Made by a program: the position numbers and the translations under genes. DNA of 64,000 bases from Salpingoeca rosetta (Eukaryota; Protista; Choanoflagellata), in contig JAWQFM010000002.1 of assembly GCA_033442325.1 (NCBI GenBank), positions 25,174 through 89,173 of the forward strand. The letters are read 5' to 3'. Below, piece by piece: positions 7,967-23,270 of the stretch. How positions within the stretch are numbered: the first letter of the stretch is position 1; each line of letters starts with the position of its first letter. The notes under the pieces are model-generated. The model was not told the origin of the DNA. It ran no database searches and saw only the letters and a list, made by a program, of their open reading frames with translations.

Positions 7967-10900
7967 ATGGGTGACACCCACAGCAAGGCAGAGGGAGAGG
8001 AGAGGGCGAGGGAGGAGGTGGAGGCCTTGCTGGCGCAGACAAAGCTGAATGATGAAGCGAAAGACAAGATCAGGGCCATCGCCAACAACACGTGTGGGGA
8101 TAAAGTGAGGTGAGCGCATACCAAAATGGCATATTGCTGTGTTGGAGAACAGCACGCACCCTGCATGCTCTGCTCTCAGCTTGCCTTGTTGCTGGGCTTT
8201 TCGTGTGGGGCAACCACAATCGCCATGGCCGATGTGACTTATTGTCTGCTTGTCTCTTGGCCTGGCACGCATTGAATGGCAGCTTTGTTCGGGCTGGCCT
8301 CGGCGACAGTGGGGTGACCGCGTTGGCAGAGGCGCTCAAGGACAACACCTGCCTCAAAGAGCTTGAGTACGTGGTGATTTGAACTGCATCGTGTGGCATG
8401 CATTTCTGGTTGATTGCTTCATGCTGGTTGTTGGCTATCGTCTTTTCCTCTTTGTGTGCTCACGGCATGTGTTTTGACCGCCCACTTTCCGTGTTGACAG
8501 CCTGTGGTACAACCGCATCAGCGATGAGGGCGCACTGGCGTTGGCGGAGGTGCTGAAGCACAACACGACCATGACAAAACTCTTGTGAGTTGAACACACA
8601 TGCATGCATGTTTGGAGATGGGCTGCCTCACTGCCGTTGCAAAATGCCCTGTGCTGTGGGTGCGCATGCGCATGTGTGGTGGGGGTGGGGTCAATGACAA
8701 TGGTGTTACCCGCAGCGATCATCCCGTTCTCACTCACTCTTCACCCATATGGCATCATCGCTGTGCGTGGCATCATACCATCTTGACAGCCTGGAACACA
8801 ACAACATTGGTCCTGAGGGCGCTGTGGCGTTGGCGGACGCACTGAAGCACAACACGACGTTGACCGCACTCATGTAAGTGTGACACACATACATGCACGC
8901 ATGTTTGGATGGCAACGGGCTGCGTCAATCTCATTGCACCATTATCCCGTGCTGTTTGTGTGGGTGTGCGTGTACGGATGCACCGCGGATGCTCATGTGT
9001 GGTGGGGTGGATTCCATGTGTTGCTACCCACTGCAATCATCCCTCACTCACCCCTCCTCTCATGTGGCATCATCGCCCTGCGTGGCATCACACCATCTTG
9101 ACAGGTTGAGGGGCAACCGCATTGGTCCTGAGGGCGCTGTGGCGTTGGCGGAGATGCTGAAGCACAACACGACCTTGACTACACTCGAGTGAGTGTGCAC
9201 ACATGCATGTGTGGATGGCAATGCGCTGCGTCACTGCCATTGCGCAATGCCCTGTGCTTTGCGAATGCACGTGTGTTGTGGAGTGGGTTCAACGACTGTG
9301 TTTCCGCCCACAGCGACCTTCACGCGCTCACTCACTCTTCCTCGCTCATGTGACATCATCACCCTGCGTGACATCATTCCATCCTGACAGCCTGGCACGC
9401 AATTCCATCGAGGATAAGGGCATTCTTGCGTTGGGGGAGATGCTGAAGTACAACACGACCATCGAAGGCCTCGAGTAAGTGCACACACAAACACGTGCAA
9501 ATTTGAATGGGCGGTGTCACTGCAGTGTGTCATTGCCTCCGCGCGCATGCGAGCAATCAGGTCACATTCCTGCCTGCGAATGCCAGCCGCTGCGTTCGTT
9601 TTTGCCCACTCACCGAGATCCTTATCTCATCCAACAGCATGCACAACAATGGTACCACGGAGCGAGCCATGGTGAATGTGCTGAAGCAGCTGCAAGTCAT
9701 GGACACCAAGGCCAACATACGGTGAGTTTCATGCCCTTGCCACATCGCTCATTCAGCTACCCACTCGGTGTCAGGTCACCCTCTTCCTTCTCACATCCCT
9801 CTGCGCTTTCCCCTAGGCTGTTCGAGGACAAGCTCAAATCCTCCACCGCCGTTGCCCGTGTACTGGCCACGCTCCGCATCAAGCGGCCAGACTTCAACGT
9901 CGTCTTCTGCAAGTGGTGAGTCCATGTCAGGCTTCCTCTTGCTGCAACCACTGCTCCCACCTCACCTCCTTTCCTCTATTCGCGCTGCATTCTTCTTCTC
10001 CTCAGGCGTGTCAAATTTTTCAGAACAAAGGACGACTTCAGCCCTGCCGCCAGGGCCGCCTATCAAGATCAGCTTGATCTCCCGAAACTGCTTGAAACAG
10101 GCCCCGTCCCTCTTGGGACAGCGAAGGTGTTCGTGTGCGGCGATTGCGGCATCGGCAAGACGACCATGCTCGAGTCGCTCCCAGATGCTGATGAGGGCAG
10201 CAGTTACCTTCCCCGATTCCTGTCATCTTGGTTCGGGCAGCCACGTCATGATCCAGAACAGCCTGGTGCTTATGGGGTCATCGGCTACATTGGGCGATTT
10301 GTATCAGCTTTTTCCTGGCAACCACGCCACGATCCACGCCAGGCATGCGCGCACACGCCCGGCATTCGCGCCCGTGAAATGAAGCTCAAACAGAGCCACA
10401 GCAGCGATGACACTGCGTCTCTTCATGTGTACGACTTTGGTGGAAGCCGGGCCTATCACGTGATCCACACGCTCATGATGTCGGATCGCTTCGCTGCGTT
10501 TGTCGTCTGCGTCGACCTCTCCCAACCAGAAGAGCACGTGAAGGAGCGCGCCAACTACTGGCTGCAGTTCATCTGCACGCGACTGAAGCAGGGCATTGCG
10601 GCTGCCACAGCAACAGCAGGCGACGACGAGACAGAAGACACGAAGCCGCGCGTCGTGATCGTGGGCACCAAGAGGGATCTTGCCCGAAAGATTGGGCTTG
10701 TTGAAGCATTTTGGCAGCCCACTTGGAGCGCAGCGATGGTCGCACACCTCAAAAGAACGTATGGCAGCATCGTTGACATCCAAGACAGCCTCATCTCCCT
10801 CAACTGTCATGGGCGTGGTGATGTCAGTTTCAACACGCTTCGCGCGCGCCTTGTGCGAAACTGGCGGTGGATGAAAGGGCAAGAGGTTCTCGTCCCCAGA

Positions 10901-11817
10901 GTTGTGGATCGGCTTGCGACAGCCCTCCAGTCAGCCAGGAATGAGAAGCCAGCGTGGGTCATCGATTCGCTCTTTCAGTTTGTCCGAACCCACACGCCTG
11001 GACTCGACTTGACCTCCTTTGACATGACAATGTTTTCTTCTGCGCTGAGGTAGGCTTGCAAGACTTCGCAGATTTGTCATCCTTGTTGTGCAAACAGTTG
11101 ACTGACTTGAGGACCAGTGCCAGAATGCTCACACACGCCTACACCCTTGCTGTCCCTGCTTCCCACACATGTACACAGGTACTTCCACACACGTGGCGAT
11201 CTGCTCTGGTATTCCAACACCCCATCCTTGGCGGATTTCGTCTTTGTTGACCCCAACTGGCTGCTTCATGACGTGCTGGGGAGAGCGCTGACGCCGGATG
11301 GCGTGCAGCAAGGCTCGATCACAAAAAAAGGCGTTGTGACCTTCACAGACCTGGAAACCGCATTTGATGGCATCGCCGACGCAGATCTCGTCATCAACGT
11401 GCTGCAGCACATGCTCTTCTGCTTCGAGCTGCCGCCTTCGAACTATGGCCAACAGCGATTCATGCTGCCGAGCCGTGTTGAGGAGGAAGTCGATCTCGCA
11501 ACCGCCTGGCCTCAAGCTGGTTTCTGGCCCCTCTATGCCGGACGACTGCTGGTGGTCGAGAAGAAGGCGCTCGCACTGCCACCTGGCTTCTTCCCACACG
11601 TGCAGACGCTGCTGCACAATTCGTTTGGCACAACCCTTAGGGTGTGGGAGGATGCCTTCTTCTGTGAACACGATGGCGTGCAGTGCCTCGGACTGCTGCG
11701 TGGCGATCGACAAGTCGACGTCTGGGTGCGGGCATCTTCTGGCGCAGAGCACAAAGCCCTGCCATTCATGACAAAGGTCAGTTTGTGAGCGATTGTGAGT
11801 GCTTGTGGGCATGTATG

Positions 11818-11850
<33 letters not shown>

Positions 11851-13062
11851 TGAGAGAGCTTGCGTTGTTGTGCCCCATCGCTTGCCAGGGAATGGCCAGT
11901 CTATATTTCCCCTCTGCTCGCCCTTATCCCATCCTCTGCTCACTTGCGGTGTTGATGACAGGTGCTGTCAGTGCTGCAAGAGGAGGCAAGAGGGATTGAC
12001 CACGTCCACCTCGTCCTCAGCACGAAACACCTGAAGCGCCACGAAAAGTACCCAGCTGCGCACAAGCTTGAGGATCTGACAGGCAAGGACCCAGACGAGC
12101 TCGTCACATCCACGCACCACAGGGAAAGCCAGACCCCAGTGTCCGACCGCGTTGGCGATCTGTTCCTGCAGGCGCCCACGCAACCACCACCCGTCATGCC
12201 GTCTTGGCAGTTGCGCGACCACGAATGGCACCACCCTGCTTGGCGGCTCGACGATGCCTTTGATGAGCAGCTTCCATGGAGCGGGCCAAGTTCACATGGC
12301 GTGTATTCGGCACCCTTGCCACCAAACACCGACCTCTATCGATGGATTGAGAGTCAGATGGCGCCGGGCCTCACCCTGTCGCGCGTGGAGATGATCAAGT
12401 CCACCACAATGCTCGATGCCTTTCACACCGAAATGAAGAAATCGGCGACTCGTCGTGGTGGTCAAAAGCCCTTCAACAAGGACTTTGGGGCTGGCGATCC
12501 GGAGAAACAAGCCATGCTCGATCGGCTCAAGACGCAGTTTGCAGAAACACCCGACAGCGTGAAGCACGTCAATGTGCTGATTGGTTTCCACGGCTGTGAC
12601 GAGGCTGTCACCGACGACATCACCGCCGCGGGCACCGCCAACCTCAGTAACCCGAACGACCCTGGCTTCTTTGGTGCTGGCATCTACCTCACGCCGCAGG
12701 CCAATTACGCGGCTGGCTACTCGACACGCCTGCTGACTGGAAACTGGCGCGCACCCAACGCAGATGGCGAGCACGTAATGCTCCTGTGCGCTGCCAGCGT
12801 CGGCCTCGCATACCCGATCACCAGGAGTAAGGACTACCCATCGTCTGGGGAAAACAAGTGCAAGAAGTTCTGGGGCAAGAAGCTGAAGAACGGCTGCGAC
12901 ACCCATTATGCTCAAGTGACGAAACGCATGAGCTATCAATCCACCGACACGCCTGCCACCTTTGACTTCGAGGAGTATGTGGTCTCACAAGAGGCGCAGG
13001 TTTTGCCATTCGCCAAGGTGTTTGTCAAGGTGGACAAAACAGCACTCGCAGCGCAACTCTAG
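7967..13062 (+). CDS. Roco protein: RNI-type LRRs - Roc GTPase - COR - PARP-like ADP-ribosyltransferase (1162 aa, 11 exons)
   Basis: Exons 7967-8109, 8283-8366, 8501-8584, 8790-8873, 9105-9188, 9391-9474, 9638-9721, 9817-9915, 10006-11049, 11179-11776, 11962-13062 splice GT-AG into one 3489-nt open frame. LRRs of the form LxxNxIxxxGAxALAxxLKxNTTLxxL. Roc: GDCGIGKTT, HTPGI, YDFGG, VGTKRD. COR: YFHTRGDLLWY...VFVDPNWLL, FMLPSRV, LPPGFFPHVQ. ART: FHG, GFFGAGIYLT, MLLC, EEYVVSQEAQVLP. Confidence 0.92.
8283..9721 (+). repeat. Tandem exon+intron cassettes, one 84-nt LRR exon each
   Basis: Six exons of exactly 84 nt, all flanked by phase-2 introns. Introns 8585-8789, 8874-9104 and 9189-9390 are mutually similar (e.g. 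...catcatcgc(t/c)(g/c)tgcgtggcatca(t/c)accatcttgacag). Confidence 0.9.
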
Positions 13063-17669: not shown

Positions 17670-18760
17670 CTTGCAGACGCATGCGTAGAGGTTGGTGGCG
17701 GCAATCAGAAACGCCTTGTGCAGCGGATTCTGCTGGATCAAACTCGAGCGCCTCGCGGAAGATCTTGTGGTCTTTGTGTCCAGCACACGCGAGGTGCGGA
17801 GCATGGAACGAGGCAAACACGCGATCAGTTGCGGTGTGGATGGTGCTGCCAGAGCGAACACCACACACACATACACGCACACACACACACACACACACAA
17901 ACACAGACACACACACGCACGCACGCACACACACACACGCACGCACACACACACACACGAGTCCTCACCTGACCAGAAGGGCTCTCCACTCTTGGTCTTT
18001 GCGGGGGAAGTTGGCGATGAGTTGCAGAATGACATCGCGGAAAAACGCGTGGAAGTCGCGCCATGCCAGCGACACACACGTCTCCATCGTCGGCTTCTCT
18101 TGCAGCTGAAAGAAAGAACGTGTCGGTGGTGGTGAAGGTACGGAGATGTTAACCCTCATAAGCAGGAAAGGGTGTGTCATCACATCCATCACACAATTAC
18201 CACACAACTACCACACGCTACCATCACCCTCAACAACAACAACACCAGCACCTGTGCGGCGAGGTCCTTGATGGCCTTGAGCGTGCCCACGCCGCGTTCG
18301 AGGGCGCCAATCCACTCACCGCCCACGTGCTGCTCAAACTTCGTCTCCAGCCCCGAGGTGAATCCCTCAGGATCCTCCAAGAACTGCTGCAGCTGCGACG
18401 CAGGGCTCACAAACAGGTCCGCGAACTTGGCCCGCGCCCACTCGATGCAGTGGTCAATGAGGTGTGGGAAGTTGTGCAGCGTGCACATGGGGATGCCGCC
18501 ACCTGAGAACAGAAAAAGAAGATGAAAGAAGGGATGTTGACTGATGATGAGGCAATGTGTTCGGGCGGGTTGAAACGGTTGCGCGAGCTACTCAAATGCA
18601 CACACGCACGTGCACACAGCACACATACCTGCTTCTGCGTCGCCGCCGTCGCTGCATGAGTTGGTGGTGTGCGGCACAATGACGTCGACGTTGGCGTCCG
18701 TGCCCATCGTCCCGCTCTCCAGCAGTGGCTTCTCGTACAGCACACACTCGCTGTCAACAG
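17670..18760 (-). pseudogene. Ubiquitin-activating enzyme E1 (UBA1/UBA6-like) internal fragment
   Basis: Exons VDSECVLYEKPLLESGTMGTDANVDVIVPHTT / IPMCTLHNFPHLIDHCIEWARAKF (catalytic-Cys motif) / ILQLIANFP..KTKSGEPFWSG / LEFDP..NPLHKAFLIAATNLYA. Frameshifts near 18005 and 17730; no N-terminal or C-terminal E1 exons recognisable. Confidence 0.85.
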
Positions 18761-21946: not shown

Positions 21947-23270
21947 TGAGTGTGTGTGTGCATGAACTTGTGCGTTGGGGAAGGCGTGTTGGATAACATA
22001 ATGTCCTTCCATGCAGAATGTCTCTCGCCCTTCACACCACCACCACCACCACCACCAACACCACCACAATCCCTTCTGCATTGCACTGGGTGTACGGCAG
22101 CTGTCTCAATCGAACGAAGAGCTGAAACGCACCGGCACCATCGCCGCCGCCACCGTCACCCGCACCTTGTTCGCTCTTGCCAACGACGCAGACATCTCCA
22201 TCGACGGTGCGTGCGTGTGTTCATGTGTGCGTGTGTTCATGTGTGTGCGTGTTTGCGTGCGTTTGCGCCCTTGTTTGCAGTTCACCTGAGTCCCCCGTGT
22301 GTACCTGTCGTGCTCCTCCTCATCCCCCACTCACCCGTCTCCTCGCCTGTCCAACAGACAACCATCTCTCCTCGCTGTTGCAGGCATTGCACTTCATCTA
22401 TGTCGACAAGTGCGTTCAGCTGACATGCTCTGTTGCCACAACGCTTCCACATCCACGCCCAGCTACTGCCCATCCATCATCGTGGTGTCGTTTCCTCCCC
22501 CGCTCCCCAGCACCAACAGCCATCAAGAGCAAGCACATCTATCGGGATGCGTGAACGGGGATGGCGGACTCACCATTGACCCACCGCCACCACAGCCGTT
22601 TGGCTTCAGGTCGCTCGCCGACCCCGGCAGGCACGTGTGGAGGCCGCCGGGATCCCCAAGCGCACGTTCCAGCACAACAACACCCTCAACACGATTGTGG
22701 TTTGAGCAGACGGACGGGTGTGCCCCACACGCGGGAGGTGTGCTCCAACTTCTCGCCCGAGGACGCGCGCGCGCGAAGTGGGCAAGCACACGCTCGTGGT
22801 CGTCAACGAGAAGACGCTGCAGGCGTCATGCGAGACGAAGCTGAAGCTGCTGTCGGGGATTGCCGCCGTGTTTGCGGGCACAGTGCGCTGCAAGACCGAC
22901 GTGGCATTTCTCCGCACGTGCAGGGTTGCAGAAGCACGCTGCCGGGACGCGGACGTCTTCTTGTTCCTGATGTCGCTGCAGCCCTTTGTATGGTGGAACC
23001 TGTCGCTGGGGACGGACAACCTGAACCCGGAGGACGGAGACGGCGGCAGAGGTGCAACACGAGAGTTGGGCGCATCCCCCGACTAGCGTGGGCCTGCAGC
23101 GACAACGTGCTGTTCCGCACGGTGGCGGACAACGAGGACAGGCTGGCGACCCAGCCCTCCCGACAGGCTGCTGTCCGCCGTGCACGCTGGGCAACTGAAC
23201 CCGCTGTCGATACCGCCGCACGTTCCCGTGCTGATGGAACTACTTTTCCACCGGCCGCACCCTGGAGCTG
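21561..23270 (+). pseudogene. FANCD2: FANCD2 partial pseudogene, copy 2 (diverged tandem duplicate of ~19805-21460)
   Basis: RQEVVGALVAHIGTGQAQEVDAAMPVLLLSLATDHPKLLHPFALMLNGILDCLSNL. Exons and introns are collinear with copy 1 but differ by many substitutions and indels. Confidence 0.85.

What the first reader, a model, noticed from the sequence alone, without database searches (positions are those of the whole stretch)
8283..9721. One-LRR-per-exon cassette array with the splice junction inside the ligand-binding strand
Seen: six 84-nt, phase-2 symmetric exons, with three mutually homologous introns, indicating that exon+intron units were duplicated. Each junction splits the codon for an exposed residue of LxxLxLxxN (D, F, M, D, D), next to variable pairs (WY, EH, RG, AR, HN). 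Any exon can be skipped, duplicated or swapped in frame, and a new junction can recode the split residue. Established: exon-shuffled LRR-Roco arrays were proposed as diversifying pathogen receptors in the brown alga Ectocarpus. Inference: a convergent combinatorial receptor-diversification device.
Basis: partly seen in the sequence, partly recalled or inferred. Interest (0 to 1): 0.78.

Follow-up and report, generated by a model that had tools for sequence, protein, structure and literature searches.

The report
Shuffled LRR exon cassettes, choanoflagellate ROCO-PARP gene
This is the sensor end of a Salpingoeca rosetta gene (PTSG_13136), built from one-repeat 84-base exons whose ligand-facing codons vary far more than the rest across about 20 copies that lie mostly near chromosome ends. 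The exon design itself is the ordinary one of animal NLRC3-type genes, and the shuffling principle is already known from brown algae and ciliates.

Summary
There are six 84-nt, phase-2 exons, the junction codons read D, F, M, D, D, and introns 2-4 are homologous. One caveat: the public model PTSG_13136 starts the sixth exon 84 nt further upstream.

The stretch is the RI/NLRC3-type LRR array of a Salpingoeca rosetta LRR-Roc-COR-PARP gene.

At least 20 paralogous arrays share the exons and also the introns. 19 of the 22 arrays I fetched lie 13-70 kb from contig ends, and two of those ends carry telomere repeats. Each array has a fixed head cassette, 1-9 internal cassettes and one of two fixed tails (PARP-type or ANK-Roc-COR-TIR-type genes).

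In 102 internal cassettes, every column whose majority base is below 70% falls in one of two classes. Most are in the codons for x2, x3, x5, x7, x8, x10 and x13 of LxxLxLxxN (plus the Leu/Met first position). The other two are synonymous third positions.

Units are 95-100% identical, introns included, between genes whose Roc-COR parts are only 22-25% identical. Differences sit in short patches at exon ends.

Germline cassette shuffling and hypervariability are therefore supported. A "convergent device" is not: an anchovy NLRC3 gene has the same 84-nt phase-2 exons split at the same codon. Exon skipping is untested.

This scan had already reached the same family-level reading on three paralogous arrays of this genome.

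The parts
7967..8109 (+). Exon 1 (start codon, 47 codons + 2 nt). It ends in phase 2 with a degenerate half-repeat (..IANNTCGDKV|S).
   Evidence: Read. Matches the N-terminus of the public protein P0175. The same N-terminal exon occurs in the TIR-type paralogs.
8283..8366 (+). LRR exon 1, the 'head' cassette (FVRAGLGDSGVTALAEALKDNTCLKEL). 84 nt, phase 2.
   Evidence: Head cassettes of the same type open every paralogous array.
8367..8500 (+). Intron 1 (134 nt). This intron type is position-specific: it follows the head cassette in the paralogs too.
8501..8584 (+). LRR exon 2 (internal cassette).
   Evidence: (Pfam LRR_6).
8585..8789 (+). Intron 2, homologous to introns 3 and 4.
8790..8873 (+). 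LRR exon 3 (internal cassette).
   Evidence: (LRR_6 24.7 bits, above the 23.4 cut-off).
8874..9104 (+). Intron 3, homologous to introns 2 and 4.
9105..9188 (+). LRR exon 4 (internal cassette). Its first base is G, so the junction codon reads ATG (Met).
9189..9390 (+). Intron 4, homologous to introns 2 and 3.
9391..9474 (+). LRR exon 5 (internal cassette, more diverged).
9475..9637 (+). Intron 5. The public model ends it at 9553 and counts 9554-9637 as coding.
9638..9721 (+). LRR exon 6, the 'tail A' cassette (MHNNGTTERAMVNVLKQLQVMDTKANI). This is the fixed last repeat of the PARP-type genes.
9817..9915 (+). Linker exon (99 nt, phase 2 on both sides).
   Evidence: Read. Present in P0175.
10006..11053 (+). 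Exon holding the Roc GTPase (P-loop GDCGIGKT).
   Evidence: Pfam Roc 29.9 bits, cut-off 27.
11117..11788 (+). Open frame holding COR-A.
   Evidence: 31-32 bits, below the 35.3 cut-off.
11962..13062 (+). Open frame holding the PARP catalytic domain (C-terminus of the protein).
   Evidence: 30.8-33.9 bits, cut-off 26.7.

Best explanation
The stretch is the ligand-sensing LRR array of PTSG_13136. This gene belongs to a largely subtelomeric S. rosetta family of Roco genes, in which an LRR array is followed by Roc-COR and either a PARP or a TIR effector.

Each 28-residue RI/NLRC3-type repeat sits on an 84-nt exon that is phase 2 on both sides. Any number of units therefore stays in frame.

Arrays appear to grow, shrink and exchange material in the germline. 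The likely route is unequal crossing-over and short-patch ectopic gene conversion between exon+intron units, with the near-identical introns and the invariant ~57-nt scaffold inside each exon as the obvious homology. As a result the two half-strands that flank each intron (x2,x3,x5 on one side and x7,x8,x10,x13 on the other) assort independently. The concave surface diversifies while the scaffold and introns stay homogenised.

Shown here: the exon anatomy, the family, the variable cassette number, hypervariability confined to the exposed codons, mosaic cassettes, exchange between deeply diverged Roco subfamilies, and position near contig ends.

Inferred: that the LRR binds variable ligands, that this switches the Roc-COR GTPase, and that the switch releases an NAD+-consuming effector (PARP here) in an immune or non-self recognition role.
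For: Anatomy and public model.

Family: one search gives 87 DNA matches covering exons and introns. One search shows 20 loci with head + 1-9 internal + tail cassettes. All 102 internal cassettes used in the alignment are 84 nt and phase 2; two off-length cassettes turned up later (81 nt; 70 nt).

Position: contig lengths are, and 19 of the 22 fetched arrays lie 13-70 kb from a contig end. About 17% would be expected if placement were random (68 contigs x 2 ends x 70 kb out of 55.4 Mb). Telomere repeats are assembled at the C36 and C25 starts, 36 and 50 kb from arrays.

Hypervariability: in the codons x7, x8, x10, x13, x2, x3 and x5, positions 1 and 2 are all below 70% majority. In contrast, 15 of 19 scaffold third positions are at least 90% conserved, and the donor-proximal intron bases are at least 90% conserved.

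Mosaics:
- cassettes 16_9 and 16_6 are identical over ~270 nt of intron+exon, then differ at 5 bases within the last 14 nt, all of them replacement changes. By arithmetic this has a chance of about 6e-6.
- One search also shows the same unit 95-100% identical in PARP-type and TIR-type genes, whose Roc-COR parts are only 22-25% identical.
- Four-gamete combinations of the 5' and 3' exon modules are present.
- the window gene and its 96%-identical C20 paralog differ in patches centred on x3/x5 plus the first ~30 nt of the next intron.
- The PARP exon of the C28 copy is 90% identical to the window's, but its Roc exon is only 64% identical.

Structure: modelled strands at residues 46-48, 74-76, 102-104, 130-132 and 158-160 each end on the split-codon residue.
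Against: No formal dN/dS or recombination test could be run, because the script machine was lost. The argument rests on conservation classes and worked examples.

The window gene itself is a quiet member. Its units are 61-82% alike, and cassettes 2-4 keep the same order in the C20 copy. No change of cassette number can be shown for it, because the C20 array runs into an assembly gap.

The immune role is inferred from architecture only. Most contig ends lack assembled telomere repeats.
Confidence: 0.75

Rival explanations
1. Diversification happens at the transcript level. Cassettes are skipped or chosen alternatively during splicing, so one gene yields many receptor isoforms.
For: All exons are phase 2 on both sides, so any skip stays in frame.

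The public model PTSG_08728 joins internal cassette 4 directly to the tail, although the GenBank DNA holds five more intact cassettes. PTSG_09099 omits four.

A 70-nt frameshifting cassette with intact splice sites at L017:1967-2036 would have to be skipped for that gene to stay open.

Alternative splicing of LRR exons is reported in brown algae (PMC11378527).
Against: No RNA data were examined.

In both paralog models, the retained upstream cassette has the same 3' end as the true last internal cassette (TWL|GG and ITSL|GA). That is what collapse of short-read transcript assemblies across near-identical repeats would produce.

All 102 cassettes have invariant AG and GT and a conserved GTGAGTG donor, with no sign of graded splice-site strength.

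The window gene's own public model keeps all its cassettes.
Confidence: 0.12
2. This is an ordinary repeat protein under concerted evolution. Subtelomeric recombination duplicates and homogenises the units, the variable positions are merely unconstrained, and there is no adaptive diversification or receptor role.
For: Subtelomeres generally breed multigene families. Zebrafish NLR-B30.2 genes have variable LRR numbers without notable LRR variability (PMC4852459). The window gene shows no recent change in its array.
Against: Relaxed constraint cannot make replacement sites more variable than silent sites and introns. Here all 14 first and second positions of the seven x codons are below 70% majority, while most silent scaffold sites and the flanking intron bases are at least 90% conserved. 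Near-identical units differ only at those codons.

Open frames are kept, and Pfam finds Roc and PARP above their cut-offs.
Confidence: 0.1
3. The array is a decaying or mis-assembled repeat, that is, a pseudogene or an assembly artefact.
For: The C20 copy has a head exon one base short in a G run and then runs into Ns. One paralog holds a 70-nt cassette.
Against: The window gene is open through all exons and matches a 1190-aa public protein. The cassette spacing of the C28 array is the same in the GenBank record of its gene and in this assembly.
Confidence: 0.03

Closest known systems
Brown-algal LRR-ROCO genes with shuffled LRR exons (Ectocarpus and kelps; Zambounis 2012, PMC3341825; Teng 2024, PMC11378527)
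   Same: LRR-Roc-COR order. One LRR per exon. All introns phase 2. Variable exon number. Inactivated cassettes. Variable or selected residues on the concave face. Proposed immune receptors.
   Different: The algal exons are 72 nt and encode 24-residue repeats (GxxPxxLxxxxxLxxLxLxxNxLx). In that published consensus the exon boundary lies after the strand; I have not examined algal sequences myself. Here the exons are 84 nt, the repeats are 28-residue RI-type, and the x5 codon is split.

The algal proteins end after COR. These carry PARP or ANK...TIR effectors and lie mostly near contig ends.
Animal NLRC3/NOD-type NLR genes (RI-type LRRs)
   Same: Tested on an anchovy NLRC3 gene: 84-nt exons, phase 2, first base + L6x7x8N... 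and ending L4 + 2 nt of x5. That is the identical junction.

LRR sequences are 35-39% identical to a paralog of the window gene, PTSG_13043.

Zebrafish NLR-B30.2 genes have one LRR per exon, a fixed last repeat and 0-6 variable-number repeats (PMC4852459).
   Different: The switch domain is NACHT in animals and Roc-COR here.

The zebrafish LRRs are described as not particularly variable.

That the mammalian NOD1/NOD2 LRR exons are also 84 nt is from my memory only and was not checked.
Tetrahymena 90-bp-exon LRR gene arrays (PMC6564038)
   Same: Exact-length exons. More than 96% phase-2 introns, with a 'junction' amino acid. The youngest genes are concentrated in subtelomeric and pericentromeric regions. 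Near-identical exons are shared between genes through ectopic recombination.
   Different: 90-nt exons, thousands of genes, an association with a LINE-like element, and no Roco or NAD+-effector context.
Lamprey variable lymphocyte receptors
   Same: Fixed end modules, a variable number of internal LRR modules, diversity on the concave face, and patchwise templated copying between cassettes.
   Different: VLR assembly is somatic and occurs in lymphocytes. Here only germline (evolutionary) exchange is shown. This comparison is from general knowledge.

Membership tests
Roco proteins | Roc (Ras-of-complex) GTPase domain with a P-loop | tested here: met
   Pfam Roc scores 31.4 bits on the exon and 29.9 bits on P0175 (cut-off 27). 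GDCGIGKT and DFGG are read.
Roco proteins | COR domain directly after Roc | tested here: inconclusive
   COR-A scores 31-32 bits, E about 1e-7, below the 35.3 cut-off. Paralogs carry PF16095 in the precomputed Pfam list.
RI-type (RNI-like, Pfam LRR_6) leucine-rich repeats | 28-29-residue period with LxxLxLxxNxIgxxGaxxLaxxL and beta-alpha units | tested here: met
   LRR_6 scores 94.7 bits on P0175. Exon 3 alone scores 24.7 bits, above 23.4. The model shows a 28-residue strand/helix period at pLDDT 70-88.
Exon-shuffled LRR cassette arrays (Ectocarpus/Tetrahymena kind) | Equal-length exons of one phase, one repeat each | tested here: met
Exon-shuffled LRR cassette arrays (Ectocarpus/Tetrahymena kind) | Exon+intron units duplicated, and cassette number differs among paralogs | tested here: met
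   Cassette number ranges from 3 to 11.
Exon-shuffled LRR cassette arrays (Ectocarpus/Tetrahymena kind) | Near-identical cassettes shared between different genes (mosaics) | tested here: met
   compare.
Exon-shuffled LRR cassette arrays (Ectocarpus/Tetrahymena kind) | Positive selection at concave-face sites by codon models | not tested
   The script machine was lost. Only conservation classes are available.
Exon-shuffled LRR cassette arrays (Ectocarpus/Tetrahymena kind) | Alternative splicing of cassettes | not testable with these tools
   No RNA data. The hints from gene models are ambiguous.
NLR (NACHT-LRR) receptors | NACHT/NB-ARC STAND ATPase | tested here: not met
   Pfam finds Roc, COR-A and PARP but no NACHT. 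The gene works like an NLR but is not a member of that family.
VLR-like somatic cassette assembly | Somatic rearrangement of a germline-incomplete gene | not testable with these tools
   The germline gene is complete. No data from single cells or clones.

The most novel reading that the evidence does not exclude
The closest living relatives of animals may diversify a receptor repertoire on a fast time scale. One route would be regulated skipping or choice of LRR cassettes. Another would be mitotic ectopic gene conversion among subtelomeric arrays, so that clonal lineages of S. rosetta carry different LRR-Roco-PARP/TIR specificities. That would be an anticipatory-like recognition system that predates animals.
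Probability: 0.08. Interest if true: 0.9.

Novelty: new variant of a known kind. Interest (0 to 1): 0.55.

Why it matters
Choanoflagellates are the sister group of animals. A largely subtelomeric, hypervariable family that couples NLRC3-type LRR sensors to a Roco GTPase switch and NAD+-consuming effectors (PARP, TIR) would be an NLR-like recognition system built on a different switch.

The 84-nt phase-2 LRR exon with the same junction is shared with a vertebrate NLRC3 gene. This suggests that the cassette design of animal NLR sensors may predate animals.

S. rosetta is genetically tractable, so ligand specificity, effector action and cassette dynamics could be tested directly.

I found no paper that describes this family. 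The only paper holding both 'Salpingoeca' and 'ROCO' was an unrelated neuroimmunology review, which I did not open. The genome paper mentions only shared subtelomeric repeats.

Tried and rejected
- The script for tblastn, entropy, piN/piS and trees failed when the script machine was lost. All later counts come from alignment conservation lines and hand reading.
- A genome scan with Pfam LRR_6 missed these arrays, because the motif is split by the introns. It is of no use for counting.
- The C20 paralog could not be used to compare cassette number. Its array runs into Ns.
- Paper searches for the NLR LRR exon phase found nothing usable. I tested the point directly on an anchovy NLRC3 locus instead.
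- A coral NLRC3 protein had no encoding contig on record.
- I considered N-myristoylation of the MGDTHS N-terminus and dropped it, because Asp after Gly does not fit the consensus as I remember it.
- The AlphaFold model of the whole protein is poor (mean pLDDT 39.6). I used only residues 11-170 and made no fold search.
Exons were searched one by one by reference, and whole-protein steps used the public model P0175 that the database returned.
Full report
OBSERVATION

The six exons exist as described: 8283-8366, 8501-8584, 8790-8873, 9105-9188, 9391-9474 and 9638-9721 on the + strand. Each is 84 nt and flanked by AG and GT. Each reads as 1 nt + 27 codons + 2 nt. The codons formed across the junctions are D, F, M, D, D, and the next two residues are WY, EH, RG, AR, HN.

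Introns 2-4 (205, 231 and 202 nt) align along their length, and the first ~70 nt of intron 5 aligns with them too. The neighbouring introns are also phase 2: exon 1 (7967-8109) ends in phase 2, and the linker exon 9817-9915 is phase 2 on both sides (read).

The exons were scanned one by one by reference.

IDENTITY OF THE GENE

The genome is Salpingoeca rosetta ATCC 50818. The gene is PTSG_13136, a 1190-aa 'hypothetical protein' (P0175). On the whole protein, Pfam gives LRR_6 (94.7 bits), Roc (29.9, cut-off 27), COR-A (31.1, below the 35.3 cut-off) and PARP (30.8, cut-off 26.7).

The public model uses my junctions for exon 1 and the first five LRR exons. It starts the sixth cassette at 9554, exactly 84 nt upstream, which adds 28 non-LRR residues. 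Three things favour the shorter exon:
- Four paralog models use the plain 84-nt tail exon.
- The extra stretch aligns with intron sequence of the sister units.
- In an AlphaFold model it lies in a stretch with pLDDT below 50 (residues 185-223).

THE FAMILY

A DNA search of the genome with exons 2-5 and their introns gave 87 matches. Many cover introns as well as exons at 68-76% identity, and one is 95% identical.

I fetched 20 loci holding 21 arrays; the window's own array makes 22. All show the same design:
- a fixed head cassette (..GLG..GARAVAEALKDNTCLK.L);
- 1-9 internal cassettes (L..NSIG.EGAVALAEMLKHNTTL..L);
- one of two fixed tails.

Tail A (I..N.ITE.GMVNVLKQLQ..DAKAKI, the window's type) precedes Roc-COR-PARP. 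About 12 such loci exist. Tail B (L..NSITPVGGAALGAALDQNRTL..L) precedes ANK-Roc-COR-TIR, for example PTSG_08524 and PTSG_08722. Total cassette number runs from 3 to 11.

19 of the 22 arrays lie 13-70 kb from a contig end. About 17% would be expected if placement were random (68 contigs x 2 ends x 70 kb out of 55.4 Mb). The C36 and C25 starts carry assembled telomere repeats, 36 and 50 kb from arrays. The genome paper noted repeated subtelomeric regions shared by most telomeres but did not describe their genes (PMC4054682).

WHERE THE VARIATION LIES

The 102 internal cassettes, each with 30 nt of intron on either side, align without gaps over the 84 nt (A2). AG and GT are invariant. The first exon base is C in 98 of 102. 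The donor GTGAGTG is at least 90% conserved.

Columns in which the majority base is below 70% fall into three groups:
- the first and second positions (and for two codons also the third) of the codons for x7, x8, x10 and x13 at the 5' end of the exon, and x2, x3 and the two exonic bases of x5 at its 3' end;
- the first position of the Leu/Met codon (L1 of the motif);
- two synonymous third positions (an Asn C/T and an Ala T/C).

Of the 19 scaffold codons, 15 have third positions at least 90% conserved. Replacement variability at the exposed codons therefore far exceeds silent and intronic variability. That is the signature of diversifying selection or templated patch exchange. I could not run a formal codon-model test, because the script machine was lost.

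In the structure model, residues 11-170 have pLDDT 70-88. The strands at 46-48, 74-76, 102-104, 130-132 and 158-160 each cover x3-L4-x5, so each ends on the split-codon residue. The junction does lie inside the strand.

MOSAICS

- Cassettes 16_9 and 16_6 of the C28 (PARP-type) gene are identical over about 270 nt of intron and exon. They then differ at 5 bases within the last 14 nt. All five are replacement changes, and the two cassettes' downstream intron starts are identical again. By arithmetic, five differences all falling in some 14-nt window out of 278 nt has a probability of about 6e-6.
- The variant patches recur in other cassettes (for example the MTLL, TWL and TAL endings), so they look templated.
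[quoted passage not shown] The Roc and COR parts of those genes are only 22-25% identical. The LRR module has therefore moved between deeply diverged Roco genes.
- All four combinations of the 5' and 3' exon modules occur. LSENSIGPEG and LGGNRIGPEG each occur with TAL and with MTLL. Within the C25 array, the K-type and D-type exons each occur with MATL|I and with ITSL|D.
- For the window gene itself, the 96%-identical C20 copy differs in patches centred on x3/x5 of the head cassette and cassette 2 plus the first ~30 nt of the following intron. Cassettes 3-4 and their introns are about 99% identical.
- The C28 copy is 90% identical to the window in the PARP exon but only 64% in the Roc exon.

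MECHANISM

The best reading is germline exchange. Equal-phase exon+intron units allow in-frame expansion and contraction. Recombination and short-patch conversion use the near-identical introns and the invariant ~57-nt scaffold of each exon as homology. The two half-strands on either side of each intron assort independently.

The functional chain (variable ligand, then Roc-COR switch, then PARP or TIR effector) is inferred from architecture only.

The window gene is an older, quieter member. Its units are 61-82% alike. No change of cassette number can be shown for it, because the C20 array ends in an assembly gap.

COMPARISON WITH WHAT IS KNOWN

- Brown algae. Their ROCO genes have one 24-residue LRR per 72-nt phase-2 exon, exon shuffling, selected concave-face sites and alternative splicing (PMC3341825; PMC11378527).
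- Ciliates. Tetrahymena has tens of thousands of 90-bp phase-2 LRR exons, and the youngest genes are subtelomeric or pericentromeric (PMC6564038).
- Zebrafish. NLR-B30.2 genes have one LRR per exon, a fixed last LRR and a variable number of others (PMC4852459).
- Direct test. In an anchovy NLRC3 gene (L049), the LRR exons 18562-18645 and 22459-22542 are 84 nt and phase 2. Each begins with the third base of the x5 codon and ends with L4 plus two bases. This is exactly the S. rosetta junction.
- Sequence relatives. NLRC3 LRRs are among the nearest non-S. rosetta relatives of the array of the paralog used as query, PTSG_13043 (35-39% identity).
- Fungal relative. The nearest fungal relative (Linnemannia) has an essentially intronless gene: 3613 nt for 1172 aa.

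The 'junction inside the strand' is therefore the ordinary design of NLRC3-type LRR exons, possibly shared by descent within Holozoa. It is not a convergent invention. The parallel with Ectocarpus holds for the shuffling principle, not for the exon itself.

Recoding by new junctions is marginal, because the downstream first base is almost always C.

The Roc exon has only 57 hits at E of 1e-3 or better, and 4 below 1e-30, among 1.84 billion representatives. This Roco lineage is therefore very restricted.

SPLICING

This part is untested.

The public model PTSG_08728 joins internal cassette 4 to the tail, although the GenBank DNA holds all eight internal cassettes. PTSG_09099 jumps from exon 5 to exon 10. 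In both models the retained cassette has the same 3' end as the true last internal cassette. Collapse of short-read transcript assemblies is therefore at least as likely as real skipping.

A 70-nt cassette with intact splice sites (L017:1967-2036) would have to be skipped for that gene to stay in frame.

EARLIER NOTES OF THIS SCAN

Three follow-ups on paralogous arrays of the same genome reached the same family-level reading. My tests were made independently and agree with them. One of those notes prompted me to read the Tetrahymena paper, which my own search had already listed.

VERDICT

This is a new variant of a known kind, of moderate to high interest for the origin of animal innate immunity.

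Noticed in passing
window 9554-9637: The public model PTSG_13136 counts these 84 nt as coding, giving a 168-nt exon and 28 non-LRR residues. They align with intron sequence of the sister units and are modelled at pLDDT below 50. Either the acceptor is mis-annotated or it is an in-frame alternative 3' splice site.
   Followed up: partly
L016 (G000:C28:973.2-975.7k) / L050; L011 (G000:C25:50.7-53.6k): The public models PTSG_08728 and PTSG_09099 omit five and four intact, in-frame cassettes that are present in the DNA. This is either real exon skipping or collapse of repeats in the transcript assembly.
   Followed up: partly
L017:1967-2036 (G000:C15): A 70-nt cassette (14-nt deletion in the scaffold) keeps its AG and GT. 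It is an inactivated cassette like those described in Ectocarpus, and it would shift the frame if spliced in.
   Followed up: no
L029:7357-8571 / L002 (G000:C20:1235.3k): This is the nearest paralog (96% identical). Its head exon is one base short in a G run, which is either a frameshift or a 454 homopolymer error. The array is then cut by a run of Ns.
   Followed up: partly
G000:C28:969859-972735 compared with window 10127-13062: The PARP exon is 90% identical to the window's, but the Roc exon of the same gene is only 64% identical. This is a domain-level mosaic between paralogs.
   Followed up: no
L024 / P0089 (PTSG_08722): One internal cassette has 26 instead of 27 full codons (81 nt). Exact length is therefore not absolute, but phase is kept.
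   Followed up: no
L026, L024, L021 and other tail-B loci: The same N-terminal exon and LRR cassettes head ANK-Roc-COR-TIR(-SAM) genes. Two NAD+-consuming effector classes thus share one sensor module.
   Followed up: partly
window 11962-13062: The PARP domain appears to keep the His-Tyr-Glu motif (..GFHGC.., ..GIYLT.., ..FEEYVV..). This comes from reading the translation, and no alignment to a solved PARP was made.
   Followed up: no
window 32630-32738 (+): A 5S rRNA gene (Rfam RF00001, 69.8 bits).
   Followed up: no
L036:18-106 and L037:28-170 (starts of G000:C36 and C25): Assembled CCCTAA telomere repeats sit at the contig starts. The other 16 contig ends I sampled have none.
   Followed up: yes
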